Shown: positions 1 through 44,837, counted from the first letter of the stretch. The stretch is 64,000 nucleotides of DNA from Macrostomum lignano (GCA_002269645.1 NIVC01001747.1:264386-328385); one strand, 5' to 3'. Made by a program: numbers and translations. The notes: generated from the sequence alone by a model not told the origin.

Positions 1-153
1 CAGCGAAAGCGGCGACTGCGGCAGCCGCAGCCTCCTGACCAGCTCGGATCGAATACTTGGCCAGCCGAACTCTGAACCAATGATTGATTTTCGAGCTCAC
101 GACCTGTTCTATCTGGCAGTGCAGTATGTGCCCGTGAAAGGTCGGCCGCACCT
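1..153 (+). CDS. Internal coding exon (5'-truncated) of an unidentified spliced gene ('gene 1')
   Basis: Frame 2 is open (SESGDCGSR...DLFYLAVQYVPVKGRPH) and ends at a strong donor CT|GTAAGT (154). Phase 2 matches the acceptor at 680, giving ...GRPHLLFQKYLMV. Confidence 0.7.
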
Positions 154-265
154 GTAAGTGAAGTTTCGTATCCTGAAAGTACATTGCCGCACAACTAGCG
201 CTGAATCTTAAGCGCCTTAGAAGGGCCATAGTGTTCACAGGCACGCCCCCGGTCAATTTAAGGTG

Positions 266-574
266 AGGGGTTGTAAGCCCAGTGGTCAGAGCGTCAGACT
301 CACGACTCACGACGGTCGGGGGTTCGATTCTCGATCCACTCGGAACAATTTGTGTCCTTGAGCAAGACACTTGACTCTGCATTGCTTCAGTTCACTCAGC
401 TGTAAAATGGGTGCCAGCATTAGCTGGGGTAATTGAGGGTGTGTGGCGACCCTCCCAGTCCTTGGACTGAACAGCCGTACGCAGCCTTCAGATGCGCCTC
501 GCAATAGCTGCGGCTGAGCTGTCGGTTGCACATCTGCCCATTGGGGCAAGTATAATCAATAATAATTATTAGTA
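266..574 (+). mobile_element. tRNA-derived CORE-SINE (MIR-like core) in an intron
   Basis: A-box-like AGCCCAGTGGTCAGAGCG (~276-293) and B-box GGTTCGATTC (321-330). The central TGTGTCCTTGAGCAAGACACTT...CTCAGCTGTAAAATGGG (351-411) resembles the MIR/CORE consensus. AT-rich (AAT/ATT) tail; 8-bp TSD TTAAGGTG at 258-265 and 575-582. Confidence 0.85.
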
Positions 575-680
575 TTAAGGTGTCAAATGGAGCTCAAAAG
601 CGTTAGTTAAAGTACATGAACTTCAGAAGGCGCAAGATGCACTAAAAATGTGCACATGGCCTTACTATAAACAATTTCAG

Positions 681-1008
681 CTTATTTCAAAAATACCTGA
701 TGGTCTCCAAAAAGCAGACTGAGCAGCAAACGCAGAAGCAGCAGCAACCGAATTCTGAAGAAGCATTGTTGCCAATTGACAAACTGTTGACAATAATCGA
801 TATGAAAATTTATCGCAGCAGCAACCGGGAATTGATTGGCAGTCTGTCCCGTTGCGTTGAACTTCCCAACGCTCTGCCCAGTCTGCGAGTGCCCGGACTG
901 ACTCGAAGTGTTGAAACTGCAGCGGCTGGCGCTTCTAGCAGTGTGTTCTCGCTGGCTAACATTGTGACCGAGCGACTGGTGCAGGAGGCGAACAGTACAG
1001 CCGTTGGG
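681..1008 (+). CDS. Coding exon of gene 1
   Basis: Acceptor TTTCAG| at 680, in frame with ORF 700-1029. Proposed donor GGG|GTGTGT at 1009 (phase 0); unspliced read-through hits TAG at 1027-1029. Confidence 0.7.
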
Positions 1009-2405
1009 GTGTGTGCCACTGTCTCTTAGGTGACCGCCCCTGTCTCTTAGGTGACCACCTCTGTCTCTTAGGTGACCGCGCCTGTCTCTTAGGTGACCAC
1101 CCCTGTCTCTTAGGTGACCACCCCTGTCTCTTAGGTGACCGCCCGGCCCTGTCTCGTAGGTGACCATCTCTGTCTCTTAGGTGACCGCCCTTGTCTCTTA
1201 GGTGACCACCCCTGTCTCTTAGGTGACCACCCCTGTCTCTTAGGTGACCGCCCTTGTCTCTTAGGTGACCACCCCTGTCTCTTAGGTGACCGCCCTTGTC
1301 TCTTAGGTGACCGCGCCTGTCTCTTAGGTGACCACCCCTGTCTCTTAGGTGACCACCCCTGTCTCTTAGGTGACCGCCCGGCCCTGTCTCTTAGGTGACC
1401 ATCTCTGTCTCTTAGGTGACCGCCCTTGTCTCTTAGGTGACCGCCCTTGTCTCTTAGGTGACCACCCCTGTCTCTTAGGTGACCGCCCTTGTCTCTTAGG
1501 TGACCGCCCAGCCCTGTCTCTTAGGTGACCACCCCTGTCTCTTAGGTGACCGCCCCTGTCTCTTAAGTGACCGCCCCTGTCTCTTAGGTGACCGCCCCTG
1601 TCTCTTAGGTGACCGCCATTGTCTCCTAAGTGACCGCCCCTGTCTCTTAGGTGACCACCCCTGTCTCTTAGGTGACCGCCCTTGTCTCTTAGGTGACCGC
1701 CCGGCTCTGTCTCTTAGGTGACCGCCCGGCCCTGTCTCTTAGGTGACCACCCCTGTCTCTTAGGTGACCGCCCTTGTCTCTTAGGTGACCACCCCTGTCT
1801 CTTAGGTGACCACCCCTGTCTCTTAGGTGACCACCCCTGTCTCTTAGGTGACCATCTCTGTCTCTTAGGTGACCGCCCTTGTCTCTTAGGTGACCACCCC
1901 TGTCTCTTAGGTGACCACCCCTGTCTCTTAGGTGACCACCCTTGTCTCTTAGGTGACCGCCCGGCTCTGTCTCTTAGGTGACCGCCCGGCCCTGTCTCTT
2001 AGGTGACCACCCCTGTCTCTTAGGTGACCGCCCGGCCCTGTCTCTTAGGTGACCACCCCTGTCTCTTAGGTGACCATCTCTGTCTCTTAGGTGACCGCCC
2101 TTGTCTCTTAGGTGACCACCCCTGTCTCTTAGGTGACCACCCCTGTCTCTTAGGTGACCATCTCTGTCTCTTAGGTGACCGCCCTTGTCTCTTAGGTGAC
2201 CACCCCTGTCTCTTAGGTGACCGCCCCTGTCTCTTAGGTGACCGCCATTGTCTCTTAAGTGACCGCCCCTGTCTCTTAGGTGACCACCCCTGTCTCTTAG
2301 GTGACCGCCATTGTCTCCTAAGTGACCGCCCCTGTCTCTTAGGTGACCGCCCCTGTCTCTTAAGTGACCGCCCCTGTCTCTTAGGTGACCGCCGCTGTCT
2401 CTTCG
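1009..2405 (+). repeat. 21-bp minisatellite GTGACC(A/G)CCCCTGTCTCTTAG, about 65 units (some 25-bp variants)
   Basis: Direct reading. Units begin GT and end AG; first unit 1009-1029, last (TCG-ending) unit 2385-2405. Confidence 0.97.
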
Positions 2406-2428
2406 GTGGGCACCTTTTCTCTTGATAG
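2385..2428 (+). CDS. Candidate 44-nt exon of gene 1 (VTAAVSSVGTFSLD)
   Basis: Preceded by CTCTTAG and followed by donor AG|GTATGT (2429); in frame with exon 681-1008. It ends in phase 2 while the next exon needs phase 0, so a 1-nt error or exon skipping is required. Confidence 0.45.
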
Positions 2429-2487
2429 GTATGTAAACTCGTTAATACCCTGTTCAAGGGGTTGGTAACTAGAAAACTTCCATAAAA

Positions 2488-2720
2488 GTGTCTCTAGACC
2501 ATATTGATCATGCAGGAGTATTTTAAGAGTAGGACTGTGTCTCTAGACTACGAGTGTCTTTCGACAATAGACTACGAGTGTCTCGAGACCATAGAACAAG
2601 GAGTGTCCTTAGACTATAGATTAGGAGTGTCTATAGATCATAGATCAGTAGTGTCTCTAGACTACAGAACAGGAGTGTCTCTAGACCATAGATCAGGACT
2701 GTCTCTAGATCATAGAGCAG
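2488..2720 (+). repeat. Degenerate ~23-bp tandem repeat (GTGTCTCTAGACCATAGAACAGGA-like)
   Basis: Recurrent GTGTCTCTAGA(C/T) cores. Confidence 0.7.
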
Positions 2721-2838
2721 AAGTTTATCAGAGCAGAAGCGTCTTATGAAGCTTCCCTGTTCTTAGAGTTCTTAGATAGTTTAAGAACTGACACAGTGTA
2801 TCAATTAACAATAATTCCCGTAATTATCCCCTCAAAAG

Positions 2839-3144
2839 ATCCCCGGCTTCCATTCAATCTTCTTCGGCGTGTACAGTGTCCACCCTGGCGGCAAGTTTCG
2901 ACTTGTGTCGCGTCGAGTCCAACCAATCAGCAACAGTGACGCAGTCGGCGACTTCCTTGCCGAGGGTCTGATCACCACGGACCATCGCACGGAGACCTGG
3001 ACTGAGCCCAACCAGCTTCACCTGGTCTTCCCGGCTCCTCCGATTGCCACCAGACGGGAGAGTCTTCTGCGCCAGAAGTTGCAACAACAGCAACAGCAAA
3101 AGCAACAGTTTCAAGCGTCGAGACTGCAGCAACCAATGAAGTAG
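2839..3144 (+). CDS. Terminal coding exon of gene 1 (IPGFHSIFFGVYSVH...QKLQQQQQQKQQFQASRLQQPMK*)
   Basis: Acceptor CAAAAG| at 2838, open frame with many C-ending codons, polyQ, stop TAG at 3142-3144, AT-rich sequence after. Family not recognised. Confidence 0.65.
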   Translation: MPGFHSIFFGVYSVHPGGKFRLVSRRVQPISNSDAVGDFLAEGLITTDHRTETWTEPNQLHLVFPAPPIATRRESLLRQKLQQQQQQKQQFQASRLQQPMK

Positions 3145-3949
3145 TTAAGACAAATGCGATTGAACTGACGTGCAATAACGGTACGGTTTTTCCCCGCAAA
3201 GTTTTTGATTTAAAAAAACTCATTTAAAAATGTTTTTTGTTACATTTTTTTATAAAAATGATACTGAGTACTTTTATTGAATATGTCCAGAGACAGAGAG
3301 AGAAAAGTGCCGCTAAACTATGCTTTAAATAGATTCTAATGCACTTTTCTGCCGAAACTCAGAAAGGACGTAATGTCCTTTGTTGCCTTGCTTTGTGAAC
3401 AAAATTGCTTAATTTTTACTGCTGGGAAAACGCTTACATCTTTACTGTAAGTAGAAATGTACAAAAATTGTAGCATCTTTTCTCATTGTTTTGAAAGAAA
3501 GGGAAACTGTTTGCTTTTAAAAAGAAAACTCCAATCAGATTCTAATATCGACTTAATTTTCGATTTATTTACAAATTTTTTGTTAAAACTATGTTAGCTA
3601 AAAACGAGAGTGGCTGTTGGAAAAAAGAATTAATGCTAAGTCAACATGAGATTATAAGATATAGTAATGAAAATATTTTGCTCTGAAATGCAAAACCTGA
3701 CAAGATGTAGAAATAATAATGCGATCTGCTTTGCAGTGAAAATCAGCTAAATTAATATTGAAAATTTACAATAGCAACGGGTATTGTTCGAACCCGGTCG
3801 GAACTCAGTATGTTATCTAAGAAGAATTCAAGGTGCTGCATGTACTTTTAAATAAAAACTAACTAAAAGTCAAACATAACAAGCAAGAAATATTTGTTTT
3901 CGGCAATTCTTGTCTTAAGCGCTAAACCGTGAGCAAACCCAATTATTAG

Positions 3950-4325
3950 AGAGCCAGGTGCCAGAGTGGCGCCAACCCAGGTGTCAGAGTAGCACCACCC
4001 CAAGTGTCAGAGTGGCACCACCCAGGTGTCAGAGTAGCACCAACCCAGGTGTCAGAGTAGCACCAACCCAGGTGTCAGAGTGGCACCAACCCAGGTATCA
4101 GGGAGGTGCCAAGCCAGGTGTCAGGGTGGCACCAACCCAGGTGTCAGAGTGGCACCAGCCTAGGTGTCAGAGTGGCACCAGCCCAGGTGTCAGAGTGGCA
4201 CCAGCCCAGGTGTCAGAGTGGCACCAGCCCAGGTGTCAGAGTGGCACCAACCCAGGTGTCAGGGTGGCACCAGCCCAGGTGTCAGAGTGGCACCAACCCA
4301 GGTGTCAGGTGTCAGGGTGGCGCCA
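3950..4325 (+). repeat. 23-bp minisatellite ACCCAGGTGTCAGAGTGGCACCA
   Basis: About 16 tandem units; explains ORFs 3958-4437 and 4106-4330. Confidence 0.95.
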
Positions 4326-4636
4326 AGTAAAAATAAATAAAGCACTAATACTAATAAAGAAACCAAACTACGAACTAATAAAGAAACCGTTTATAAAGTA
4401 CAGATGGTACTTTGGGCTGTTATTACACGGTGTCTAATACATAATTTTCATAGTTTAGACCCATATGTCTGATAAAAATGACAGATTCAAAGCTAAAAAT
4501 AATAATTCGTCCTTTTACTTCATCGCGAAATGGTCCGGGGCCATCAAAATTCCAAATTACGATGCATTTCGATAGTATAATAAGTAAAAAAATAAGTCAG
4601 GCATCCAAAGTTTTGTACTTGTAGAAGCTCACTAAA

Positions 4637-5443
4637 TCACCTACCAGACGAGTTCCTCGCCGAATCAATGGTAAATATATCGAAATTGGTCACTTTACCA
4701 ACATCGTTCTCAACAACCACGGCGAGCTCAGATTGCACTCGACTGTCGCTACGACTGGACAGTCTTAAATTGCTGCGGTGCCTCTGCGGACTCGACTGTT
4801 GGTCTCTGCTGGTTGGGCCGCTGTTCTCCTCAGGGAATTGTGTCTCATCCACGGCTTCGTTGTCGTAGTAGGCGTACCCGTCATCCAGGTGATGCTCCGT
4901 TGTTACAGCCGATGTTCCGGCTTCACCAGGGCTCGCAATGTACTGTTCTGACCGGTCTTTGACCAGGGATTTAATGCACAGAATCCCAGTAACCATGGCT
5001 AGCACGCTGATAACGCAGAACAGTATAATCTCGATGATGTCCGGCACAAGAGCCGGTACAATATTGAACCCGTGACGAAGACCGTTAAACAGCAGGTTCA
5101 ACAAGAAGCTGATGGTACATAGCAGGCAGCCAACAACAAATGTTGCAATGAACGACCATTTCAAGCCCCGTTTGGCCGCCACAATGGCAAATGAGCCGGT
5201 CAGGATGGCGCACAGAATCGGCAGAACGGAGCCGAGTACGCTGAATGCCGTCACACCGCAGGCCGATTCGTTAGTCTTGCAGAATTCCTGAGACTCACGG
5301 ATGCTCAGCAGAGCAACTGTGGCCGCCACACGCATCACAATACAGTTACCAGTCAGCACTAGGATGGCAATGCCTATGCGAAAGATGTGCCCAGCTGGGT
5401 AGGAGTTGTAGCTTAGACGTTCGTTGCCGTCTTTACAGCACAT
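4637..5443 (-). CDS. Intronless 268-aa four-transmembrane protein, CD20/MS4A/sarcospan-like topology
   Basis: ATG with upstream in-frame stop; four hydrophobic segments, Cys pair in the first loop, LTGSFAIVAAKR motif in TM2, polar C-tail with YAYYDNE. Family assignment rests on topology only. Confidence 0.7.
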   Translation of the reverse strand: MCCKDGNERLSYNSYPAGHIFRIGIAILVLTGNCIVMRVAATVALLSIRESQEFCKTNESACGVTAFSVLGSVLPILCAILTGSFAIVAAKRGLKWSFIATFVVGCLLCTISFLLNLLFNGLRHGFNIVPALVPDIIEIILFCVISVLAMVTGILCIKSLVKDRSEQYIASPGEAGTSAVTTEHHLDDGYAYYDNEAVDETQFPEENSGPTSRDQQSSPQRHRSNLRLSSRSDSRVQSELAVVVENDVGKVTNFDIFTIDSARNSSGR

Positions 5444-6379
5444 GGCATTGCTTGGTTATAGCGGTCTCGATGCTGTGCCGTGCTACTCGCTTTGCGTGTT
5501 GCCCATTTTTTATCTATGTGGATTTTCTTTCTTTTAAAGCTCCAGCGACCCTCCCTCCTCACTTCAGTCTCTATCTCTTTCCAAGCTTGCTCTGGCTGTA
5601 TTTGTTCATAGGTGTCTCCCGGCAACTCTGCATCAAAATATGCGCAAGCACCGCCTACAGCTCTCTCTCTCTTTCTCCTTTCTCTCTCTCTCTCTCTCGC
5701 TCTTTTTATTCAAAGTTGCATCGAACGAGCGAAGGCTTCGTCTTATACTCACAGCTAGCTGAAATCTATCTTTAATAAGAAGCTTAGACCTCCTACTGTC
5801 CTACCTTTCTATCTGTCTAAATTCTCTTTTTACTGAAGAAATTTGAACGCCACCCAGCCAACGGTGATTAGTTAATATCAAGCTCTCCGCGTCTGCACAA
5901 ACAGCCACCAAAAATAAGAGAGACAAAAATGAGCAGCCACTCTCGAGCCTCTCACGACTAGCTTGAAATCAAGCCAGCACAGACCCTTTAGTCTGAGCAA
6001 TGTGAACAATTTTAATGAGAAACTATTTTGATATTTTATAGTCCCATCTGTTTATCGTGTATGCCGCTCTGTCCTGCCATGGTAATGCTTGTTTTTGTTT
6101 TGGCCCTAGCCTAACGAAAAGTAGTTGCTGTGCGTGAGTGACAGCCACGGGTTTTCTGCGGTATTGACAGGTGTGCCCCAGTAAGAGGGGCCAGCGTTAA
6201 TTACGTTAGCTTTTTGTGCTAGAACTTTTCAGAAGGCTTCAAATGCCAAGGTATCTATTCTTGGAGAAACATCGGGTCTACTCCTAAGATGACAAAAAAT
6301 TCAAACAAAAAATTAATGAACTTCGTTATAAGGTGGTATGACAGTCTTAAATACTGAGGCGTAGCTATGGTCAGAGAAG

Positions 6380-7955: not shown

Positions 7956-10040
7956 TCAAACCCAATAGTTTACTCGCGGCTTCTGAGCGAGCCGAGTACT
8001 TTGTCGTAGCGATACAGTTGGTGTGGGCTGCTCTTGCATGCTCTGCTCCGTTCCGGTCAACTCGGTCGGGCTGTCAACAGCTTCAGGAGGTTTTGCTGGA
8101 GGTTCTTGTACTGCGGCTGATTCTTGCTTAAATTCCGTCTCCTCGACAGCCGCATCTTTCCCCTGGACCGGGTAGAGTCGCAACTGATCACGATGGGCCT
8201 TCTTGCACTGTCCATCGGCTAACCTGACCACCGCGGTGGTGCTTCCGGTTGGAAAAACAATCTTGGCCAGAGCAGCGGTGTTGCCCGCCTTGTACACCAC
8301 GTCGTCACCTGAAGACCCACAGGAACTGAGTAGAGGTACTCGAATGGTCCTGCCCATCAGCTTCTCTGTCGGCGTGACTCCAAGCTTTCCACGTGTGGCT
8401 CGTTAGAACAGCAGAAACCGATCTAGATTTTGTTGACTCAGTCCAGTGGCTCGCATCGCCTCCTTCACTGTTCGGACGAACCTTTCTGCGAGCCCGTTGC
8501 TTTGCGGGTGGTATGGCGGGGTTGTTACATGCTGGCAACCAACACTCTTCAGCCTATTGGTTGTCTCAGCAGATACAAAACTGCGTCCATTGTCAGTCAC
8601 CAGAGTCCTGGGAATTCCGAGCTGCGAAAAAGTTCGTCGTAGCCGAGACACCACTGTGGCTGATTCCATGTCGTTAGTCAGATGGACTTCTGGGTAGCTT
8701 GAGAAAGAATCTACCAACACCAATAGGTACTGGCCATTTATTGGTCCTGCAGAGTCTGCATGTATACGATCCCACGGCTCTGTAGTATCTGGCCAGGAAC
8801 TGAGGTGATTCCGGTTGCTTGATTTGACCATCTTGCACATTGTACACCTGCTGATGTAGTCCATGACTTCCTTGTCCAAAGCTGGCCACCAGTATTGTGA
8901 GCGTATTAAAGACTTAGTCCTTTCCATGCCCAGGTGCGTCGAATGAGCTTCCTCCATGATCGTTTGTCTCAACGCACGCGGTGGAACTACTCTCAATCCT
9001 CTAATCACCAGTCCGTCTTCCATAGTTAGTTCGCTGGACACCATCTTGTAAGGCCGTAGGTCCTGGTGGTTGAAATTTCCAGTTCGGATCGCTTCTTGGA
9101 GTGGTTGTAACTCCGGACATTGCTTGGACTGAATCCGCAATTGCTCAATAGTTGAAGTCGGGTGAGCCAGTTCAATACTACCAATGCTGAGTGTTTGCCC
9201 CTGTCCGGGTCCAAGAAGTCGAGACTGATACTGATACTGATACTCGTGCCGGTAACTCTTGGTCTGGTCCAAATACAAAAGTGAGCGGACGATTGTCGGT
9301 TATCAAAGCGAAATGCCTCCCTGCCGCCCCGTGTATAGTTGACACTGAATCGGGATTTTCTTGTCCTCGTGCACAAACTGTAGTGTGACGCAGATGGCAT
9401 CCTGAGTCGGGCCTGTAATTGCTCCAATTGTGAACAGGTCGCTCATCGCTGGGTTGTGAACAGGTCCATTCATCGCTGGGGACTTGCTGGACACAAACTG
9501 CACTGAGTCGACGCGGCCTGCAGCGTCTGTCTTCGTCCGACACACCTTTTGAAAATGATTCAGCTTGCCGCACTTGCGACAAGTCTTCCCAGTTGCCGGG
9601 CACTGCATTTTTCCATGCGATGACCCACATCGAGGACAAGTGGTGCTAGTGCTACGTTTGAACTTGCCGCGACTTTGCCCTTTCGACGATTGTCCTTTTG
9701 ACTTGAGCACGCCGATCTTTATGACGGCCGTACTCTCTCCTTTTGGTGCGCACTTCATGATCTCCGTGGCTATTAAGGTGGAATGAGCCTCCGCCTCGGC
9801 AACCGCGTCCTTGAAGTTCAAGCTATGATGGTCCTTGACCAAAAGCTTGCCTACGATCTGTTGATCCATCAGACCGCAGATAAGTTGGTCCCGCAGGCGC
9901 TCGTCCTTGTTATCGAATTTGCATTTCTCCGCCGCCCGCAAAAGCCGTTCAGCGAACGCCCGCACTGACTCTCCAGGCGTGCGCGTGCACTATTGGAACG
10001 TGTACTGTTCAGCCAATACAAAGGTTGCCGGTACTGTAGT
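7956..10040 (-). mobile_element. Degenerate Ty3/Gypsy (Mag-like) LTR retrotransposon, internally deleted gag-pol
   Basis: Gag ERLRDQLICGL and two Zn knuckles (CPRCGSSHGKMQC; CRKCGKLNHFQKVC); protease start (QLYTG for LDTG); RNase H tail (GRHFALITDNRPL); integrase HHCC (HSTH...CTMC) and D,D35E core (HADSAGP, VTDNG, AERFVRTVK). RT is absent; in-frame stops and frameshifts; no LTRs recognised. Confidence 0.92.
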
Positions 10041-12232: not shown

Positions 12233-12501
12233 GAAACGAAAATTTTAGGGGCAACCCATACACAGACAGTTCACATCCATGAGGGCCCATGAGGAGTGTA
12301 TATGCTTTAAAGATTTGAAAGTCTGTGCCGCTCTACACCCTGTGTGAGGGTGAGTGCGAGTGCGTGTGCTATTATCACGTACATGTAGGTGGGCGCCCCT
12401 GTCTCTTGATGAGCGTCCCTAACTTTATCTCCTAAGCCGATAGAAAAGCTTGAGCTCCCGTCATTTTAAAATTACGACAATTGATAACTCAAATAGTACT
12501 T

Positions 12502-26872
<14,371 letters not shown>

Positions 26873-27069
26873 CCCAGCTCAGCTTGGGGGCAGGGAGATG
26901 TGAATTGGCTGAAATTAAAAAAAATGCACGAATATTAGGGTGCATGAAAGTTTGACGCTTCAATCATCAACTGTGGCCTACTGTGGTTAATAAAATGTTT
27001 TCTAAATACAATGCAATTAAAAGAAATAACCATCGTCACGGACTACATACTGTGCTCACAGAGTACATG

Positions 27070-27730
27070 TTGTGTTCACACAGTATATTCTTTGCTCACA
27101 CAATCTATCCTATGTTCACATAATAAATTTTCGTGTTCACACAATCCATTCCATGTTTACACAATGCATTAGCTGTGTTCACACAATCCATCCCCTGTTC
27201 ACACAATGCATTAGCTGTGTTCACACAATCCATCCCATGTTCACACAATGCATTAGCTTTGTTCACACAATCCATCCCATGTTCACACAATGCATTAGCT
27301 GTGTTCACACAATCCATCCCATGTTCACACAATGCATCCTATGTTCACACACAATACATCCCGTGTTCACACAATGCATCCAATGTTCACACAATACATC
27401 CCATGTTCACACAACGCATCCTATGTTCACACAATACATCCTATGTTCACACAATGCATCCAATGTTCACACAATACATCCTATGTTCACACAATGCATC
27501 CAATGTTCACACAATACATCCTATGTTCACACAATGCATCCAATGTTCACACAATACATCCCGTGTTCACACAATACATCCCGTGTTCACACAATACATC
27601 CCATGTTCACACAATACATCCCGTGTTCACACAATCCATCCCATGTTCACACAATACATCCCGTGTTCACACAATCCATCTCATGTTCACACAATACATC
27701 CCATGTTCACACAATGCATTCCATGTTCAC
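27070..27730 (+). repeat. ~20-bp minisatellite TGTTCACACAATACATCCCA (second copy ~36575-37235)
   Basis: Direct reading. Confidence 0.95.
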
Positions 27731-28079
27731 ATATAAGCTTCGCAAGTCCAGTTGACGTGAAAATAAAAATTTGGAAGGTTCCTCAATGGAAATCGGCAGT
27801 GGTGTCTGCTTTATACAGTGACTAATATAACCTGCTGGTGGGTTGAAAAACAGCGATAAAACCTTGCACTTTTAACGACGCCAACTAAGCCGGTCTTGAT
27901 CTCTACTCGTAACTAGCTGCGCAGGTAGCTGAAAAAAGACCCCTGCCTGAGGTTCGGCCATGCGGTTATATTATTTTGCACTTGTCCGACTCATAAGTAG
28001 ATGCCCAATTGTTATCTTTTCGCTGATAGCAACCTGCAGTAACACACCAGAAAAAGCTCCTGACTATAGTTTTGATTAG

Positions 28080-28430
28080 ACTACATCAGATCAGATTGGA
28101 TTGGATTAGATTCAATTTGATTAGAGTAGATTAGATTAGATTTGATTTGATTAAATTAGATTAGATTAACTAAGACTAGATTTGATTTGATTGGGTTAGA
28201 TTAGATTAAACAATTTTACATTAGATTACATTAGATTGGATTAGATCGGATTGGATTAGATCAAATTAGACTAGATTAGATTATATTAGTTTGGATTAGT
28301 TTAAATTAGACTAGAATATATAGGATTATATTAGACTAGATTATAATAAATTAGATTGAATTAGATCAGATTAGATCGGATTTGATAGATTGGATTAGCT
28401 TAGATTAGATCAGATTAGATCAGATTAGAT
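28080..28430 (+). repeat. Degenerate (ATTAG)n repeat (second copy ~37585-37935)
   Basis: Direct reading. Confidence 0.85.
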
Positions 28431-29009
28431 TGGGGCGAAATGTAGATCTATATTCACGATTTAAACAAAAAATTCTAAAACTTTAACCAGCAACTTTTAA
28501 CCTGAAAATAACCTGCTTCGCTGTTACCCACTCAGAGTAAAAGATTATCATCGCTACAAGCGAGCTGCGCAGCGAGAAAGAGGCTGACTTCGCTACATTG
28601 GACCGGTAATAACTACTGCCTTATTACCGTAGACCTTAACCGGAATTTCTGCGCTATCAATTCCTACTGATTCCCACGCTGCATTCTCCCCCCCCCCAAA
28701 AAAAAGTGATAAGCAACAGGTTAGAAGGCCGAGGTCAAGGTGTCCGGCATGTTGGCCGGAAACTGATGAAGCAAAAGAAAAGATATGAAGAAAAATGGCA
28801 GCAGTTCCTGTGGATAGAGGATTGTATTGCTTTCTTCTCCGCATTGGGGTATCGCATCAGAAGGTATCGCCAGCATTCAATGCTAGTTTAGACTGCCAGT
28901 CAGTTAACTTCCCAGATTGCTAGAATCGAAATCCCCTTTTTAGTCTAAAGTTGAAATTATCCTTTAGATGTTTGCGTGGAACTGCGGCTCAAATAACCAA
29001 ATCGAACAG

Positions 29010-32000
29010 TACTAGATGACCTTCAACTGACCAAAATCAATCAGCACTAAATGACCAGCAACTGACCAAAATTAATCAGTACTAAATGACCAGCAACTGA
29101 CCAAAATCATTCAATACTAGATGACCAGCAACTGACCAAAATCAATCAATACTAGATGACCAGCAACTGACCAAAATCAATCAGCACTAAATGACCAGCA
29201 ACTGACCAAAATTAATCAGTACTAAATGACCAGCAACTGACCAAAATGATTAAATGCTAGATGACCAGCAACTGACCAAAATCAATCAATACTAGATGAC
29301 CAGCAACTGACCAAAATCAATCAATACTAGATGACCAGCAACTGACCAAAATCAATCAGCACTAAATGACCAGCAACTGACCAAAATTAATCAGTACTAA
29401 ATGACCAGCAACTGACCAAAATGATTCAATGCTAGATGACCAGCAACTGACCAAAATCAATCAATACTAGATGACCAGCAACTGACCAAAATCAATCAGC
29501 ACTAGATGACCAGCAACTGACCAACTTCAATCACTACTAGATGACCAGCAACTGACCAAAATCAATCAGTACTAAATGACCAGCAACTGACCAAAATCAA
29601 TCAGCACTAGATGACCAGCAACTGACCAACTTCAATCACTACTAGATGACCAGCAACTGACCAAAATCAATCAGCACTAGATGACCAGCAACTGACCAAA
29701 ATCAATCACTACTAGATGACCAGCAACTGACCAACTTCAATCAATACTAGATGACCAGCAACTGACCAAAATCAATCAATACTAGATGACCAGCAACTGA
29801 CCAACTTCAATCAATACTAGATGACCAGCAACTGACCAAAATCAATCAATACTAGATGACCAGCAACTGACCAACTTCAATCAATACTAGATGACCAGCA
29901 ACTGACCAAAATCAATCAGTACTAGATGACCAGCAACTGACCAACTTCAATCACTACTAGATGACCAGCAACTGACCAAAATCAATCAGCACTAGATGAC
30001 CAGCAACTGACCAACTTCAATCAATACTAGATGACCAGCAACTGACCAAAATCAATCAATACTAGATGACCAGCAACTGACCAACTTCAATCAATACTAA
30101 ATGACCAGCAACTGACCACAATCAATCAATACTAGATGACCAGCAACTGACCAACTTCAATCAATACTAGATGACCAGCAACTGACCAACTTCAATCACT
30201 ACTAGATGACCAGCAACTGACCAAAATCAATCAATACTAGATGACCAGCAACTGACCAACTTCAATCACTACTAGATGACCAGCAACTGACCAAAATCAA
30301 TCAGTACTAGATGACCAGCAACTGACCAACTTCAATCACTACTAGATGACCAGCAACTGACCAAAATCAATCAGCACTAGATGACCAGCAACTGACCAAC
30401 TTCAATCACTACTAGATGACCAGCAACTGACCAACTTCAATCAATACTAGATGACCAGCAACTGACCAAAATCAATCAATACTAAATGACCAGCAACTGA
30501 CCAACTTCAATCAATACTAAATGACCAGCAACTGACCACAATCAATCAATACTAGATGACCAGCAACTGACAACAATCAATCAATACTAAATGACCAGCA
30601 ACTGACCACAATCAATCAATACTAGATGACCAGCAACTGACCAAAATCAATCAATACTAAATGACCAGCAACTGACCAACTTCAATCAATACTAAATGAC
30701 CAGCAACTGACCACAATCAATCAATACTAGATGACCAGCAACTGACCACAATCAATCAATACTAAATGACCAGCAACTGACCACAATCAATCAATACTAG
30801 ATGACCAGCAACTGACCACAATCAATCAATACTAAATGACCAGCAACTGACCAACTTCAATCAATACTAAATGACCAGCAACTGACCACAATCAATCAAT
30901 ACTAGATGACCAGCAACTGACCACAATCAATCAACACTAGATGACCAGCAACTGACCAAAATCAATCAATACTAGATGACCAGCAACTGACCAAAATCAA
31001 TCAATACTAGATGACCAGCAACTGACCAAAATCAATCAGCACTAAATGACCAGCAACTGACCAAAATTAATCAGTACTAAATGACCAGCAACTGACCAAA
31101 ATGATTCAATGCTAGATGACCAGCAACTGACCAAAATCAATCAATACTAGATGACCAGCAACTGACCAAAATCAATCAGCACTAGATGACCAGCAACTGA
31201 CCAACTTCAATCACTACTAGATGACCAGCAACTGACCAAAATCAATCAGTACTAAATGACCAGCAACTGACCAAAATCAATCAGCACTAGATGACCAGCA
31301 ACTGACCAACTTCAATCAATACTAAATGACCAGCAACTGACCACAATCAATCAATACTAGATGACCAGCAACTGACCAAAATCAATCAATACTAGATGAC
31401 CAGCAACTGACCACAATCAATCAATACTAGATGACCAGCAACTGACCAAAATCAATCAGCACTAGATGACCAGCAACTGACCAACTTCAATCACTACTAG
31501 ATGACCAGCAACTGACCACAATCAATCAATACTAGATGACCAGCAACTGACCACAATCAATCAATACTAGATGACCAGCAACTGACCACAATCAATCAAT
31601 ACTAAATGACCAGCAACTGACCACAATCAATCAATACTAGATGACCAGCAACTGGCCAAAATCAATCAACACTAGATGACCAGCAACTGGCCAAAATCAA
31701 TCAGTACTAAATGACCAGCAACTGGCCAACTTTAATCAACACTAGATGACCAGCAACTGACCAAAATCAATCAACACTAGATGACCAGCAACTGACCAAA
31801 ATCAATCAACACTAGATGACCAGCAACTGGCCAAAATCAATCAACACTAGATGACCAGCAACTGACCAAAATCAATCAACACTAGATGACCAGCAACTGA
31901 CCAAAATCAATCAATACTAGATGACCAGCAACTGGCCAAAATCAATCAACACTAGATGACCAGCAACTGACCAAAATCAATCAACACTAGATGACCAGCA

Positions 32001-32250
32001 ACTGACCAAAATCAATCAATACTAGATGACCAGCAACTGGCCAAAATCAATCAGTACTAAATGACCAGCAACTGGCCAACTTTAATCAACACTAGATGAC
32101 CAGCAACTGACCAAAATCAATCAACACTAGATGACCAGCAACTGACCAAAATCAATCAACACTAGATGACCAGCAACTGACCAAAATCAATCAACACTAG
32201 ATGAGCAGCAACTGACCAAAATCAATCAACACTAGATGACCAGCAACTGG
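29010..32250 (+). repeat. 35-bp minisatellite ACTAGATGACCAGCAACTGACCAAAATCAATCAAT, ~3.2 kb (second copy ~38515-41755)
   Basis: Period 35 measured directly; variant order appears the same in both copies. Confidence 0.98.
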
Positions 32251-32719
32251 CAAAACAATCAATTTTAATAACTTACCTTTAACTATATGCACTTGGCCTC
32301 TGGCTTATACAGTTCAATTAGTCCGAACAGATTAATGCAGATTAATGCCCTTCGGATGGGGAAATTGCTTACGGCTAGCTGGGCTGGGGCGGCATCGCTC
32401 CTCCTGTTTATGAACCCATACTATAAGCTGGTGCAGCCTATGTGGGAAACGTTGGAAAAACCTCCCATAAGCTTAGCAAATCCAACCCCACCACCCCCTA
32501 CTATCTATCTTCTTACCGAATTCTGCTGCATCCTCTCCTGTTTGATTCGTAAAGCTATCCAGGCCTAGCAGTGGCATGTGTGTGTGCCCGCCTCTCGTCC
32601 CATCCCTCAGCCCCTCTCTGGCCAGCCAACTCCATATAGATAACCGTTTGTGTGCAACAAGGAGATTTAAAGTAACGGAATCTGGCTGTGGGAACTCTGC
32701 GCGGCTTTAGCGAGGCTTT

Positions 32720-33144
32720 AGCGCCCAGGGGCTTTAGCGCCCAGGGGCGCCAGCACCAGGGGCTTTAGCGCCCAGGGGCGCCAGCACCTGGGGCGCCAGC
32801 ACCAGGGGCGCCAGCACCAGGGGCGCCAGCACCAGGGGCGCCAGCACCAGGGGCGCCAGCACCAGGGGCGCCAGCACCAGGGGCGCCAGCACCAGGGGCG
32901 CCAGCACCAGGGGCGCCAGCACCAGGGGCGCCAGCACCAGGGGCGCCAGCACCAGGGGCGCCAGCACCAGGGGCGCCAGCACCAGGGGCGCCAGCACCAG
33001 GGGCGCCAGCACCAGGGCGCCAGCACCAGGGGCGCCAGCACCAGGGGCGCCAGCACCAGGGGCGCCAGCACCAGGGGCGCCAGCACCAGGGGCGCCAGCA
33101 CCAGGGGCACCAGCACCAGGGGCGCCAGCACCAGGGGCGCCAGA
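32720..33144 (+). repeat. GC-rich 15-bp minisatellite GGGGCGCCAGCACCA (second copy ~42225-42650)
   Basis: Direct reading. Confidence 0.97.
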
Positions 33145-33825
33145 ACCCAAGCTGTTTCGGTTTGGTTCAGTTTGCTCTCAGGCTAAGCTAAGTAGGTCAG
33201 TTTCCACTATTTACTCTCCAATCTCTATATCTAGAACTTCTTGAATGTAGGAAAGCAACCTGCAGTTTCGGGAAAATTGTATAAAAATGCCAAAAAAGTC
33301 TGCCTGTCCGCCTCCACCCCGCCTCGTCAGCGCGCATGCGATGACGGAAAGAAACACCTAAGCGCGAGCGGATAGCGCGCAGAGATGAAATGCGCGCTCG
33401 AATTTGACTTTAACTGAGCCGGGCAAAGCAGTTTGATGGATGAACTGACAGTGAATCAAAAATGTAGCTCTTTAATCCCAAGCCTCTTGGGAATCCAATG
33501 ATGCCAAGTTCTAATTTGCAAAAACTCTACAGCAAAGAAACAAATAAAAATGATTTAAGTGAAGCAGTGAGAAAATTAACACTAACTTACCTGTTAAAAT
33601 TATAATTTAATCAAGATTAATCTGAATGAAACAGCTTAGAAAAATAAGAGACACCCCTTCTCCGTCTGGTATAAGCGCGAGTCTGGACAAGCGAACCTAA
33701 ATAGTTTTGTACGGCAGAAACTGCGTTCTGTGTTTAAAGCTGTGCATGCCTTTTGATTTTGGAAACCTCGGTATTTCTGCGGGCCACGCACAGGGTGGGG
33801 GAGGGCTCAAAACGCAATTACTCAC

Positions 33826-33924
33826 GAAGGCATGCATCGGCAGCTGCGGGAGACGGGAGGCTGCCGCGGGCAAGGGTCTCACAGTTTATTGTCTGCCTTG
33901 GACTGTCCATATTTCCTGCCGGCT
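33826..33924 (-). other. Candidate upstream (5'UTR/uORF) exon of the ANKRD6-like gene (second copy near 43332-43430)
   Basis: Long polypyrimidine tract and CCCTGCAG| acceptor, TTC|GTGAGT donor; contains an ATG (MDSPRQ...). Confidence 0.45.
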
Positions 33925-34145
33925 CTGCAGGGCAAAAGAGAGCAGAAGAAAATGTAAAGAAATAGAAAACTAGAGTAGCACTACGGGTTGATCCAAGGTC
34001 GCTGAGCATGGCACAGTGCCGCAGTTGCGCCTGGTGACGCCAGGGGCGGCTGGAGGTGACTGACAAGTAGAAAAAACAGTTCTTGATTAGCGAGTCGGTG
34101 TTGCTTTGTTGAGCCGCGGCCGAAAAAGCTAGACAAGATAAGTGC

Positions 34146-35013
<868 letters not shown>

Positions 35014-35020
35014 CTCTCAC

Positions 35021-35297
35021 CTGCCCTGCAGAGGATATCCACAGTCATGCTGAACCCATTGAAAGCGGCTTCGTGCAGTGGTGAGTTCATGTTGAGTCGC
35101 TCTCGGTGATTGACATCAGCGCCCAGGCTGATGAGCACCTGGGTGCACTGCATGTGACCGGCGGCAGCGGCCAGGTGCAAAGCAGTTTTACCGCCGGCGT
35201 CGGTTTGATTCACCGGTGACAGCTGGTTGTCGAGGATCATCTTCACTATCTGCGTGTGACCGCAGGCTGCGGCGTGATGGAATGCTGACCGGCCCTC
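35021..35297 (-). CDS. Duplicate ANKRD6-like exon 2 (copy B)
   Basis: Same sequence and splice sites as 25517-25793. Confidence 0.7.
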
Positions 35298-36275
35298 CTG
35301 TTAATGGGGTGAGGCAATCGGTTGCTGGGAGTACCGCGTTGCCCCAGATTGAAGTTTTCCTACGGTTTTGCTATGGTAATCGTTGCTATGGGAATTGTTG
35401 CTATGGGGATTGTCGCTATGGGAATTGTTACTATGGGGATTGTTGCTATGGAGATTTTCGCTATGGGAATTGTTGCTATGGCAATTGTTGCTATGGGAAT
35501 TGTTGCAATGGGGATTGTTGCTATGGTGATTTTTGCTATGGGAATTTTCGCTATGGGGATTGTTGCTATGGGGATTGTTGCTATGGGGATTGTTGCTATG
35601 GGGATTGTTGCTATGGGAATTGTTGCTATGGGGATTGTCGCTGTGGGGATTGTTGCTATGGGAGTTGTTGCTATGGGGATTGTCGCTATTAGCTGTAGTT
35701 ACTATGCTGTAACAATTTACCAGCCTGATGGCCACACAGGAGCAGGGCAGTCTAGTCACGGTTGCGTAACTAAAACTGCCTGTAAATGTTTCTTCAAAAT
35801 TTTTACTGACCAAAGTTGAAGCTCTTCTAGACATGGTCAATAAACTCGCAGAGCTGCTAAGAAAGATGAAAAGCCTGGTGAAAAAAGGTAGCAATCCGAA
35901 GGTGAGAGGCTGCAAGCGAAGGATGATGGGGGAGAGAGGAGGAACCTGCTCACAGCGCTGGCTTATATATCCCGCCCTACAAACGGGGATTTTCTTCCCC
36001 TACCCCAAAGCTTTCAAGCGTTTTCCTTCTTTGTCTCCACTTCGCCTCAGGCTGTTTTTAACGGGGCGGCAGCTTTAAAGAGATTGATTTCACACGGTAA
36101 GCCGATACTCTCAAGCTTAATTCCTTTCCCACCTCAATGCGGCAGAAGGTGTTAGCAAGGCTGCCCCTATAAAAGTCTGCATCCAGACAGAGAGACTCTA
36201 TTAGCTGCTCATGTACCCGCTGAGACGGTTTCATATGTCGGTACAATTATTCTGTAGTTATCATCTCTCGCTCAC

Positions 36276-36377
36276 CTGATCGGGCGTGACTGGCACTTTA
36301 GCTCGGATCAGCTCGCCAACCTGTCCCACATCGCCTCGGGCAGCTGCCAGTCGCAGCTTCCCAGCCTGGCTCAGCAT
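36276..36377 (-). CDS. Duplicate ANKRD6-like exon 1 (copy B)
   Basis: Same sequence as 26771-26872. Confidence 0.7.
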
Positions 36378-42300: not shown

Positions 42301-43651
42301 GCCAGCACCAGGGGCGCCAGCACCAGGGGCGCCAGCACCAGGGGCGCCAGCACCAGGGGCGCCAGCACCAGGGGCGCCAGCACCAGGGGCGCCAGCACCA
42401 GGGGCGCCAGCACCAGGGGCGCCAGCACCAGGGGCGCCAGCACCAGGGGCGCCAGCACCAGGGGCGCCAGCACCAGGGGCGCCAGCACCAGGGGCGCCAG
42501 CACCAGGGGCGCCAGCACCAGGGCGCCAGCACCAGGGGCGCCAGCACCAGGGGCGCCAGCACCAGGGGCGCCAGCACCAGGGGCGCCAGCACCAGGGGCG
42601 CCAGCACCAGGGGCACCAGCACCAGGGGCGCCAGCACCAGGGGCGCCAGAACCCAAGCTGTTTCGGTTTGGTTCAGTTTGCTCTCAGGCTAAGCTAAGTA
42701 GGTCAGTTTCCACTATTTACTCTCCAATCTCTATATCTAGAACTTCTTGAATGTAGGAAAGCAACCTGCAGTTTCGGGAAAATTGTATAAAAATGCCAAA
42801 AAAGTCTGCCTGTCCGCCTCCACCCCGCCTCGTCAGCGCGCATGCGATGACGGAAAGAAACACCTAAGCGCGAGCGGATAGCGCGCAGAGATGAAATGCG
42901 CGCTCGAATTTGACTTTAACTGAGCCGGGCAAAGCAGTTTGATGGATGAACTGACAGTGAATCAAAAATGTAGCTCTTTAATCCCAAGCCTCTTGGGAAT
43001 CCAATGATGCCAAGTTCTAATTTGCAAAAACTCTACAGCAAAGAAACAAATAAAAATGATTTAAGTGAAGCAGTGAGAAAATTAACACTAACTTACCTGT
43101 TAAAATTATAATTTAATCAAGATTAATCTGAATGAAACAGCTTAGAAAAATAAGAGACACCCCTTCTCCGTCTGGTATAAGCGCGAGTCTGGACAAGCGA
43201 ACCTAAATAGTTTTGTACGGCAGAAACTGCGTTCTGTGTTTAAAGCTGTGCATGCCTTTTGATTTTGGAAACCTCGGTATTTCTGCGGGCCACGCACAGG
43301 GTGGGGGAGGGCTCAAAACGCAATTACTCACGAAGGCATGCATCGGCAGCTGCGGGAGACGGGAGGCTGCCGCGGGCAAGGGTCTCACAGTTTATTGTCT
43401 GCCTTGGACTGTCCATATTTCCTGCCGGCTCTGCAGGGCAAAAGAGAGCAGAAGAAAATGTAAAGAAATAGAAAACTAGAGTAGCACTACGGGTTGATCC
43501 AAGGTCGCTGAGCATGGCACAGTGCCGCAGTTGCGCCTGGTGACGCCAGGGGCGGCTGGAGGTGACTGACAAGTAGAAAAAACAGTTCTTGATTAGCGAG
43601 TCGGTGTTGCTTTGTTGAGCCGCGGCCGAAAAAGCTAGACAAGATAAGTGC

Positions 43652-44837
<1,186 letters not shown>

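What the first reader, a model, noticed from the sequence alone, without database searches (positions are those of the whole stretch)
1009..2428. Minisatellite amplified from a coding exon appears to have become (or created) an intron: GT...AG units in exact codon register
Seen: the 1.4-kb array is built of 21-nt (7-codon) units that start GT and end AG (GTGACCGCCCCTGTCTCTTAG). The first unit (1009-1029, GTGTGTGCCACTGTCTCTTAG) starts exactly on a codon boundary of the coding exon and carries a more donor-like GTGTGT. The last unit (2385-2405, GTGACCGCCGCTGTCTCTTCG) has TCG instead of the TAG stop and runs into GTG GGC ACC...GAT AG|GTATGT, a real-looking donor. Splicing 1008->2385 removes all stop-carrying units and leaves exactly one in frame (TAVG-VTAAVSS-VGTFSLD), the same length as the inferred ancestral exon. 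Established: tandem duplication of exonic sequence with a cryptic AG|GT is a proposed but rarely observed route to intron gain. Inference: slippage at the G|GTG microhomology plus a C->A change produced an acceptor in every unit. The ~60 internal AG|GTGACC junctions could be removed recursively, since any earlier acceptor retains a TAG. Caveat: 2428 is phase 2 and the next exon (2839) needs phase 0. Either one base is missing in the assembly (e.g. GAT AAG), or the gene now splices 1008->2839, which is in frame, and has sacrificed 15 codons.
Basis: partly seen in the sequence, partly recalled or inferred. Interest (0 to 1): 0.85.

Follow-up and report, generated by a model that had tools for sequence, protein, structure and literature searches.

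The report
Ordinary intronic minisatellite in a flatworm gene
The 1.4-kb repeat is a real 21-base minisatellite sitting at the start of an intron of a species-restricted Macrostomum lignano gene, one of about 35 such arrays in this window, and nothing found here shows that it came from an exon or created the intron.

Summary
The array is real: TRF finds 1015-2408, period 21, 64.9 copies. The window is the last 64 kb of Macrostomum lignano contig NIVC01001747.1.

Three points weaken the special reading:
- 8 of the 65 units are 25 nt, so codon register is lost after unit 6.
- 55.8% of the window is tandem array. 7 of 35 array families carry AGGT and 10 of 35 have a period divisible by 3.
- Three other introns in the window also start with an array 7 to about 45 nt after the donor.

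The GenBank gene models for three about 97-99% identical copies of the locus all use donor 1008|1009. The paper behind that annotation describes it as RNA-seq guided. The acceptors are 2838|2839 (in frame) or 2876|2877. No model includes 2385-2428.

The copies carry 15, 15 and 65 units with conserved edge units, which is typical minisatellite behaviour. Exon 2 resembles the unit no more than background does. No homologue exists outside this species, so the ancestral state cannot be tested.

That route is not excluded, but nothing supports it.

Verdict: an ordinary intronic VNTR, of low interest.

The parts
1..153 (+). 3' part of coding exon 1 of the host gene (..SESGDCGSRSLLT..VPVKGRPH, phase 2 end)
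   Evidence: Matches P0002, P0003, P0005 and P0006. The sequence was read.
154..680 (+). Intron 1 (CCT|GTAAGT ... TTTCAG|C), which holds a tRNA-like fragment at about 265-345
   Evidence: The junction GRPHL|LFQKYLM in P0002, P0003, P0005 and P0006, with the sequence. ARAGORN and Rfam do not call the fragment.
681..1008 (+). Coding exon 2, which ends on a complete codon (..NSTAVG, GGG)
1009..1029 (+). First, degenerate array unit (17/21 to consensus). Its first bases GTGTGT are the annotated 5' splice site.
   Evidence: The donor position follows from the NSTAVG|IPGFHS and NSTAVG|CPPWRQ junctions in P0001, P0003, P0005 and P0006.
1009..2405 (+). Minisatellite array of 65 units (57 of 21 nt, 8 of 25 nt), consensus GTGACC[A/G]CCCCTGTCTCTTAG, with 59 AG|GTGACC junctions
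   Evidence: TRF, unit dissection, pattern search with 62 hits against 0 expected, junction count.
2385..2428 (+).
   Evidence: It is absent from all six protein models. Between copies it differs by 1 substitution, and a 4-bp indel sits at 2429-2432.
2429..2838 (+). The non-array remainder of intron 2, which includes a second minisatellite at 2552-2724 (24-nt unit GAGTGTCTCTAGACCATAGATCAG)
2837..2838 (+). Acceptor AG (CTCAAAAG|ATCCCC, A at -3) used by the in-frame models
   Evidence: P0001 and P0006, frame check, sequence context.
2875..2876 (+). Alternative acceptor AG (GTGTACAG|TGTCC, C at -3) used by the GenBank models of two copies, one of them this window's copy. It shifts the frame when joined to 1008.
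   Evidence: P0003 and P0005.
2839..3144 (+). Last coding exon (IPGFHS...QQPMK, then stop)
12388..12412 (+). Solo, unamplified sequence that resembles a unit/tail hybrid (GGTGGGCGCCCCTGTCTCTTGATGA)
   Evidence: It has the top score among 27,150 non-array positions (15.5, against 11 for the next unrelated site). It shares an exact 14-mer with the unit and is conserved in L001 and L003.

Best explanation
This is an ordinary intronic minisatellite (VNTR).

A 21-nt motif next to the 5' splice site of intron 2 was amplified in place. The intron runs 1009-2838, or to 2876 with the alternative acceptor. The host is a small, taxonomically restricted Macrostomum lignano gene. Amplification most likely happened by replication slippage and unequal exchange. 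The array is transcribed and removed with the rest of the intron. Splicing goes from the GT at 1009, which lies in the first, degenerate unit, to an AG 410-450 nt beyond the array.

The splice-site look of each unit (pyrimidine run, then TAG|GTGACC) follows from which motif happened to be amplified and from the register in which it is read. The terminal 'exon-like' 44 nt are the two decayed edge units of the array.

Shown here: the array, its variable copy number, the intron boundaries in the annotation, and how common such arrays are locally. Inferred: slippage as the mechanism, and the absence of a function.
For: - The array is real.
- The window is M. lignano Mlig_3_7 contig NIVC01001747.1. 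L002 is identical to the window, and the accession prefix is tied to the species.
- Wudarski et al. 2017 (PMC5730564) attribute 15% of this genome to simple and tandem repeats. Here 55.8% of the window is array, in about 35 families.
- All six protein models keep the array out of the mRNA. The three GenBank models use donor 1008|1009. By the paper's account they come from RNA-seq-guided StringTie/TACO assembly.
- The three copies of the locus carry 15, 15 and 65 units. The first unit and the TCG-bearing last unit are kept in all three, apart from one base in the last unit. The interior differs by block duplications, for example IAANEBAAB against IAADEBBAB.
- 25-nt and 20-nt unit variants break triplet periodicity, so the array is under no coding constraint.
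- Three other exons with Pfam support (ankyrin, ankyrin, BTB_2) are followed by arrays that start 7, 16 and about 25-45 nt after their donors.
- Exon 2 resembles the unit no more than background does.
Against: - The array starts 0-6 nt from the donor, closer than random placement in a roughly 430-nt ancestral intron would usually give.
- Each unit is a good acceptor mimic: 14 of 20 pyrimidines and TAG, against AAG at the annotated 2838 acceptor. How the spliceosome skips 59 of them is unexplained.
- The combination 1008->2385 with 2428->2877 happens to be in frame.
- The GenBank annotation was filtered against transcripts that overlap repeat annotations, so a repeat-derived micro-exon isoform could have been dropped.
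- I saw no RNA reads myself.
Confidence: 0.8

Rival explanations
1. The unit was once coding sequence of a longer exon 2 (..TAVG-VTAAVSS-VGTFSLD). Its tandem amplification, together with a C->A change, created stop-bearing AG|GT units that are now spliced out. The last unit plus tail (2385-2428) survives as a 44-nt relic exon, or was recently given up.
For: - The last unit has TCG in place of TAG in all three copies, and GT follows GATAG in all three.
- 1008->2385 with 2428->2877 is in frame and reaches the normal stop. It replaces IPGFHSIFFGVY with VTAAVSSVGTFSLD.
- 2877 is an acceptor used by two GenBank models.
- The 2838 acceptor is weak-looking, AAG. That would fit a recently recruited site.
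Against: - No protein model contains the 44 nt.
- Joined to 2839, the frame breaks in all copies.
- An in-frame combination has a 1 in 3 prior, and an open 15-codon stretch about 1 in 2 (my own estimates).
- The tail reads as a decayed unit.
- The proposed donor carries a 4-bp indel between copies, and the one substitution in the segment is non-synonymous, Ala to Pro.
- Exon 2 shows no excess similarity to the unit.
- The upstream exon ends GGG, not AG.
- A solo unit-like copy sits 10 kb away in non-coding sequence.
Confidence: 0.06
2. The array acts on splicing. As a run of juxtaposed acceptor/donor sites it could be removed stepwise, because each use of an internal AG regenerates GGG|GTGACC. 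Alternatively it could act as a decoy or protein-binding platform (pyrimidine-rich UCUCUU motifs) that tunes splicing efficiency or the choice between the 2839 and 2877 acceptors.
For: - There are 59 copies of Y-rich-TAG|GTGACC, each with a TGAC branch-point-like motif 16 nt upstream of the next AG.
- Two acceptors 38 nt apart are both used in the models, although the local sequence of the copies L001 and L003 is identical there.
- Copy number differs fourfold between copies.
Against: - The unit's donor half lacks G at +5, which the bona fide donors in this window have: GTAAGT, GTGAGT, GTGAGA, GCGAGT, GTGTGT.
- The intron is only 1.8 kb, whereas known recursive splicing serves very long introns (my knowledge).
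- Dozens of unrelated arrays fill the neighbouring introns, so no special role is needed.
- Copy number is not conserved.
Confidence: 0.06
3. An origin variant, which does not exclude the best explanation. The unit was seeded from a short dispersed sequence of about 25 nt (GGTGGGCRCC..TCTCTTGAT) that also occurs as a single copy elsewhere. It did not come from sequence unique to this gene.
For: - The solo copy at 12388-12412 is the top-scoring site of 27,150 non-array positions. It joins features of the unit (the exact 14-mer CGCCCCTGTCTCTT) and of the tail (GGTGGGC....TCTCTTGAT). It is conserved in all three copies of the locus.
- The neighbouring 24-nt array shares the CTGTCTCT(T)AGA core, with up to 13 of 21 matches.
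Against: - Only one extra copy turned up in about 100 kb.
- The flanks of the two sites do not align.
- The unit was not found in the metagenome collection.
- The rest of the genome could not be searched.
Confidence: 0.15
4. The 65-unit length is an assembly artefact of a repeat-rich contig end, and the true array has about 15 units as in the other two copies.
For: - The window is the terminal 64 kb of its contig.
- It contains an 8.7-kb segment repeated at 99.93% identity.
- The other two copies both have 15 units.
Against: - The 65 units form a non-periodic string of 16 unit variants. That is not the pattern of a collapsed or looped assembly.
- The window copy also differs from the other two at unique flanking sites.
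Confidence: 0.05

Closest known systems
Intronic minisatellites / VNTRs (the general class; tandem and simple repeats make up 15% of the M. lignano genome, Wudarski et al. 2017, PMC5730564)
   Same: - Head-to-tail units of 21 nt.
- Interspersed unit variants and block duplications.
- A fourfold copy-number difference between copies of the locus.
- Decayed edge units.
- Location inside an intron and removal with it.
   Different: Nothing essential. The array lies unusually close to the 5' splice site (0-6 nt), and its unit happens to mimic an acceptor followed by GT.
Intron gain by tandem duplication of an AGGT-containing exon segment (Rogers model; Hellsten et al. 2011, PMC3265369; potato RdRp case, PMC4974935)
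   Same: - Tandem copies carry AG|GT.
- The array begins at an exon end.
- Splicing removes the repeats.
   Different: - In that model the intron runs from the GT of one copy to the AG of the next, and the mRNA keeps exactly one copy.
- Here the upstream exon ends GGG.
- The annotated acceptors lie 410-450 nt beyond the array in unrelated sequence.
- The mRNA models keep no copy.
- The flanking exon is not homologous to the unit.
Alternatively spliced human introns derived from tandem arrays (Zhuo et al. 2007, PNAS 104:882). I saw it only as a citation and could not read it; its content is from my own knowledge.
   Same: A repeat array whose units supply splice-site-like sequences within a gene.
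   Different: As I recall them, in those cases both splice sites lie inside repeat units of a coding or UTR array and splicing is alternative. Here at most the donor lies in a degenerate unit, the acceptor is outside the array, and no isoform that retains units is annotated.
Recursive splice sites / ratchet points of long Drosophila and vertebrate introns (my knowledge; not checked in the library)
   Same: A juxtaposed polypyrimidine-AG|GT motif that would regenerate a 5' splice site after ligation to the upstream exon.
   Different: - Known sites are single, conserved, and lie in introns of tens of kilobases with a strong GTRAGT half.
- Here there are 59 tandem copies in a 1.8-kb intron, with GTGACC (no G at +5) and an unstable copy number.

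Membership tests
Intronic minisatellite (VNTR) | Head-to-tail array of a 10-100 nt unit, well above chance | tested here: met
   TRF gives period 21, 64.9 copies and score 2003. The 17-mer core is found 62 times against 0 in 100 shuffles.
Intronic minisatellite (VNTR) | Lies within an intron according to transcript-based gene models | tested here: met
   P0003, P0005 and P0006 (GenBank; RNA-seq-guided annotation) and P0001 all join 1008 to 2839 or 2877. I did not see the reads themselves.
Intronic minisatellite (VNTR) | Copy number varies between copies of the locus while the flanks stay conserved | tested here: met
   65 units in the window (= L002), 15 in L001 and 15 in L003. All three share the first unit and the TCG-bearing last unit, and the flanks are about 97-99% identical.
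Intron gain by tandem duplication of an AGGT-containing exon segment | The intron is bounded by the GT of one copy and the AG of the next copy of the duplicated segment | tested here: not met
   The donor may lie in the first unit. The annotated acceptors at 2838 and 2876 lie 410-450 nt past the array in non-repeat sequence.
Intron gain by tandem duplication of an AGGT-containing exon segment | The spliced mRNA retains exactly one copy of the unit, restoring the ancestral coding sequence | tested here: not met
   None of the six protein models contains a unit-encoded peptide. A one-copy mRNA is in frame only through 2877, and no data seen here support it.
Intron gain by tandem duplication of an AGGT-containing exon segment | The unit is homologous to the flanking exon sequence | tested here: not met
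   Exon 2 has 3 windows with at least 11 of 21 matches, against about 5 expected from the background rate of 1.5%. The start of exon 3 at 2876 scores 9.5, within the top 0.4% of positions, which is suggestive at most.
Intron gain by tandem duplication of an AGGT-containing exon segment | Orthologues or paralogues that lack the intron carry a single uninterrupted unit | not testable with these tools
   HMMER against 1.84 billion representative proteins finds only this species' own protein. All three copies of the locus already carry the array.
Recursive splice site (ratchet point) | A juxtaposed strong 3' splice site and strong 5' splice site (Yn-AG|GTRAGT) | tested here: inconclusive
   The acceptor half is good (14 of 20 pyrimidines, TAG). 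The donor half GTGACC lacks the A/G at +4/+5 seen in the window's real donors.
Recursive splice site (ratchet point) | Splicing intermediates or lariats that end at the internal site | not testable with these tools
   No RNA read data were available.

The most novel reading that the evidence does not exclude
The array could be a caught-in-the-act intronization. A 44-nt remnant (2385-2428) of a formerly longer exon 2 would still be spliced in through 1008->2385 and 2428->2877, which is in frame. The 59 internal AG|GT units would be cleared, possibly stepwise. The weak 2839 acceptor would then be a recent rescue site. The GenBank set was filtered against transcripts that overlap repeat annotations, so it could have missed such an isoform.
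Probability: 0.06. Interest if true: 0.7.

Novelty: new member of a known kind. Interest (0 to 1): 0.17.

Why it matters
As it stands, the finding matters little. It is one more intronic minisatellite in a genome already reported to be unusually rich in simple and tandem repeats.

Two things are mildly useful:
- Introns in this region are almost wall-to-wall concatenations of unrelated arrays that begin within a few bases of the donor site. That raises a practical question: how does the M. lignano spliceosome ignore dozens of good acceptor mimics?
- Had the intron-creation reading held, it would have been a rare young example of intron gain from tandem duplication. The evidence here does not carry that claim.

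Tried and rejected
- Distant orthologues, needed to polarise the intron's origin. The word-indexed search found only this species' own models. The full HMMER search of 1.84 billion representatives found one protein, the same gene. Pfam gave nothing above threshold.
- cDNA-like contigs that encode P0001, P0002 or P0004: none on record.
- The unit in other collections: no exact match in metagenome contigs. Within the roughly 100 kb held, the array motif occurs only in this intron, apart from the solo copy at 12388.
- Known RNA families in 1-6000: none credible, with one hit at E = 0.34 below its gathering score. No tRNA was called.
- Fetching the neighbouring minus-strand gene's annotated protein, to map all its exons against the arrays. 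Two searches returned nothing, so I used Pfam-supported exons instead.
- Coding constraint from comparing the three copies. They are too similar to discriminate: 6 differences in 328 nt of exon 2, 1 in 306 nt of exon 3, and 1 in 44 nt of the proposed micro-exon.
- Sequencing-adapter contamination, considered and rejected. CTGTCTCTT is also the start of the Tn5 mosaic end (my knowledge), but the units diverge from it after 9 nt, and the array sits in three long contigs with different copy numbers.
- Zhuo et al. 2007 and Wasik et al. 2015 could not be read.

Full report
**What the sequence is.** The window matches locus L002 base for base across the gene: same 1830-nt intron, same 65 units. L002 is taken from contig NIVC01001747.1 of assembly GCA_002269645.1. 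The offsets place the window on the last 64 kb of that 328,385-bp contig. The accession NIVC00000000 is the Mlig_3_7 assembly of the flatworm Macrostomum lignano (Wudarski et al. 2017, PMC5730564). That paper reports that simple and tandem repeats make up 15% of the genome. It also reports that the sequenced DV1 line carries large recent duplications: 180 Mb in non-repetitive blocks at least 95% identical. Recent whole-genome duplication is described in PMC7053086. Consistent with this, the assembly holds two further copies of the locus. These are L001 on NIVC01001552.1 and L003 on NIVC01000755.1, about 97% identical overall and about 99% in unique sequence.

**The host gene.** The gene structure follows from the protein models P0001-P0006:

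| Feature | Coordinates | Notes |
|---|---|---|
| Exon 1 | to 153 | |
| Intron 1 | 154-680 | CCT\|GTAAGT ... TTTCAG\|C |
| Exon 2 | 681-1008 | ends on the complete codon GGG |
| Intron 2 | from 1009 | |
| Last exon | 2839-3144 | |

- The three GenBank models all use donor 1008|1009. One (P0006, on L003) joins it to 2839, giving NSTAVG|IPGFHS, in frame, 304 aa.
- Two (P0003 on L001, and P0005 on L002, which is this window) join it to 2877. That gives NSTAVG|CPPWRQ.., a frameshift with a stop at about 2937.
- L001 and L003 are identical around both acceptors. If the models reflect reads, both junctions therefore exist in the RNA data.
- By the paper's account, the GenBank annotation was built from STAR-mapped RNA-seq with StringTie/TACO plus a de novo transcriptome. 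It was then filtered, among other things, against transcripts that overlap repeat annotations.
- UniRef models add 963->2839 (P0002, P0004).
- The protein has no Pfam domain.
- It has no homologue outside this species, either in the word-indexed search or in a full HMMER scan of 1.84 billion representative proteins.

**Checking the observation.** The array is real (TRF: 1015-2408, period 21, 64.9 copies, score 2003).

- There are 59 AG|GTGACC junctions.
- The claim of exact codon register fails. 8 of the 65 units are 25 nt long, so the array is 1397 nt. The exon frame is kept only through the first six units, and the last unit starts at frame offset 2.
- L001 also has a 20-nt unit. The array is therefore under no triplet constraint.

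**Is the GT...AG unit special?** Any unit that contains AGGT can be written to start GT and end AG.

- Of the 35 distinct array families in this window, 7 contain AGGT on one strand or the other (4 on the + strand). 10 have a period divisible by 3. One array with both properties per window is about what chance gives.
- Arrays cover 55.8% of the window.
- Three other exons with Pfam support (two ankyrin exons on the minus strand, one BTB_2 potassium-channel-type exon on the plus strand) are each followed by an array close to the donor. The distances are 7 nt (GCAG|GTGAGA, then (TCTA)n), 16 nt (AAAA|GTGAGT, then a 21-mer array) and about 25-45 nt (CAG|GCGAGT, then a 21-mer array).
- Introns here are concatenations of arrays, so an array that abuts a donor is the local norm.

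**Is the unit derived from the exon?**

- In exon 2, 21-nt windows with at least 11 of 21 matches to the unit occur 3 times, against about 5 expected from the background rate of 1.5%. The shared GTGACCG at 964 is not significant.
- The upstream exon ends GGG rather than AG.
- The intron continues for 410-450 nt beyond the array through unrelated sequence that holds a second, 24-nt array. That array shares only the CTGTCTCT(T)AGA core with the first.
- The 23-nt tail (2406-2428) reads as a decayed unit. I counted 13 of 21 matches with one gap by eye, and 11 of 21 ungapped.
- The proposed exon is therefore simply the two edge units of the array, one of which lacks TAG.
- Fifteen codons without a stop have a chance of about one half (my own estimate).
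- Between the copies, this 44-nt stretch carries one substitution, which would be Ala to Pro. A 4-bp indel sits exactly at the proposed donor (GTATGTAAAC against GTAAAC).
- The copies are too similar for any test of constraint.

**An unexpected solo copy.** The best unit-like site outside the array, among 27,150 positions, is GGTGGGCGCCCCTGTCTCTTGATGA at 12388-12412.

- It scores 15.5, against 11 for the next unrelated site.
- It joins the unit's core (an exact 14-mer) with the tail's ends.
- It is conserved in L001 and L003.
- This hints that the motif is not unique to this gene, but its flanks do not align with those of the array.

**The phase question.**

The same GAT AG|GT occurs in all three copies, so an assembly error is not the explanation.
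- However, 2428 joined to the alternative annotated acceptor at 2877 is in frame (AG+T = AGT, Ser) and reaches the normal stop. Phase alone therefore does not exclude the micro-exon.
- No model contains the micro-exon. The repeat-overlap filter weakens that negative evidence.

**Array dynamics.** Written as unit-variant strings:

| Copy | Unit string |
|---|---|
| L001 | GHBDLBSACTAAFCM |
| L003 | GUBDLBDABDAAFCM |
| Window | GCHIAANEBAABABIAADEBBABOAFCCJCABKDABAAAEBAAPKDADAEBAAEBACQCAJCFCR |

The edges are shared (G..H at the start, ..F-C-M/R at the end). The interior differs by multi-unit block duplications. This is classical minisatellite behaviour: slippage and unequal exchange with decaying edges.

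**Splice-signal anatomy.**

- Each unit is a good acceptor mimic, with 14 of 20 pyrimidines and TAG|G. The annotated 2838 site is AAG|A, and the 2876 site is CAG|T.
- The unit's donor half, GTGACC, lacks the G at +5 that the real donors in the window have.
- How 59 acceptor mimics are skipped is unexplained. Stepwise removal is possible in principle, because ligation to GGG regenerates GGG|GTGACC. Nothing here tests it.

**Comparison with known systems.**

- The feature meets every test for an intronic VNTR.
- It fails three defining tests of intron gain by tandem duplication (Hellsten et al. 2011, PMC3265369; PMC4974935): intron ends inside adjacent copies, one copy kept in the mRNA, and unit-exon homology. 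The fourth test, an intron-less orthologue, cannot be run.
- It resembles recursive splice sites only in the juxtaposed AG|GT.

**Verdict.** This is an ordinary intronic minisatellite in a repeat-rich flatworm genome. The exon-origin and intron-creation story is unsupported, though not strictly excluded (about 6%). Interest is low.

Noticed in passing
window 1-64000: 55.8% of the window is tandem array, in about 35 different unit families with periods from 2 to 45 nt. The genome-wide figure reported is 15%. Introns here look like end-to-end concatenations of unrelated arrays.
   Followed up: partly
window 25517/25516 (-), 18791/18790 (-), 53064/53065 (+): Three further exons with Pfam support (ankyrin, ankyrin, BTB_2) are followed by arrays that start 7, 16 and about 25-45 nt after the donor. 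The BTB_2 exon appears to use a GC donor, CAG|GCGAGT. Whether arrays are enriched just after 5' splice sites genome-wide is untested.
   Followed up: partly
window 12388-12412 (+); L001 21184, L003 21906: A solo, unamplified 25-mer, GGTGGGCGCCCCTGTCTCTTGATGA, joins the array unit's core with the ends of the array's 3' tail. It is the top-scoring site outside the array and is conserved in all three copies of the locus. Its flanks are unrelated to those of the array.
   Followed up: partly
window 25500-34200 and 35004-43703: An 8.7-kb segment is repeated in tandem at 99.93% identity with a period of 9,504 nt. It includes an ankyrin-repeat exon and five arrays, and a (GATA)n/(AGAT)n array separates the copies. 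It could be a real segmental duplication or an assembly effect near the contig end.
   Followed up: partly
window 2839 and 2877: Two acceptors 38 nt apart are both used in GenBank models of near-identical copies of the locus. 1008->2877 shifts the frame (219-aa product) and 1008->2839 is in frame (304 aa). The in-frame site has an unusual AAG.
   Followed up: yes
window 2552-2724: A second minisatellite in the same intron has a 24-nt unit, GAGTGTCTCTAGACCATAGATCAG, in 7 copies. It shares the CTGTCTCT(T)AGA core with the 21-mer (up to 13 of 21 matches), and one unit is missing in L001 and L003.
   Followed up: partly
window about 265-345 (intron 1): A tRNA-like fragment (..GGTCAGAGCGTCAGACTCACGAC..GGGGGTTCGATTCTCGATCC..) suggests a tRNA-derived SINE remnant. 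Neither ARAGORN nor Rfam calls it.
   Followed up: partly
window 7956-9965 (-): Retroelement remains: an ORF with integrase zinc-binding and rve core domains (8403-9278), and neighbouring ORFs without Pfam hits. One of those (9303-9965) carries what looks by eye like a gag-type CCHC zinc knuckle.
   Followed up: partly
window about 3090: There is a 12-nt in-frame length difference in the CAA/CAG (poly-Gln) run of the last exon between the window copy and L001/L003.
   Followed up: no
window 4637-5443 (-): An intron-less 268-aa ORF that looks multi-pass membrane-like is called as a gene in all three copies of the locus. It has no significant Pfam family.
   Followed up: no
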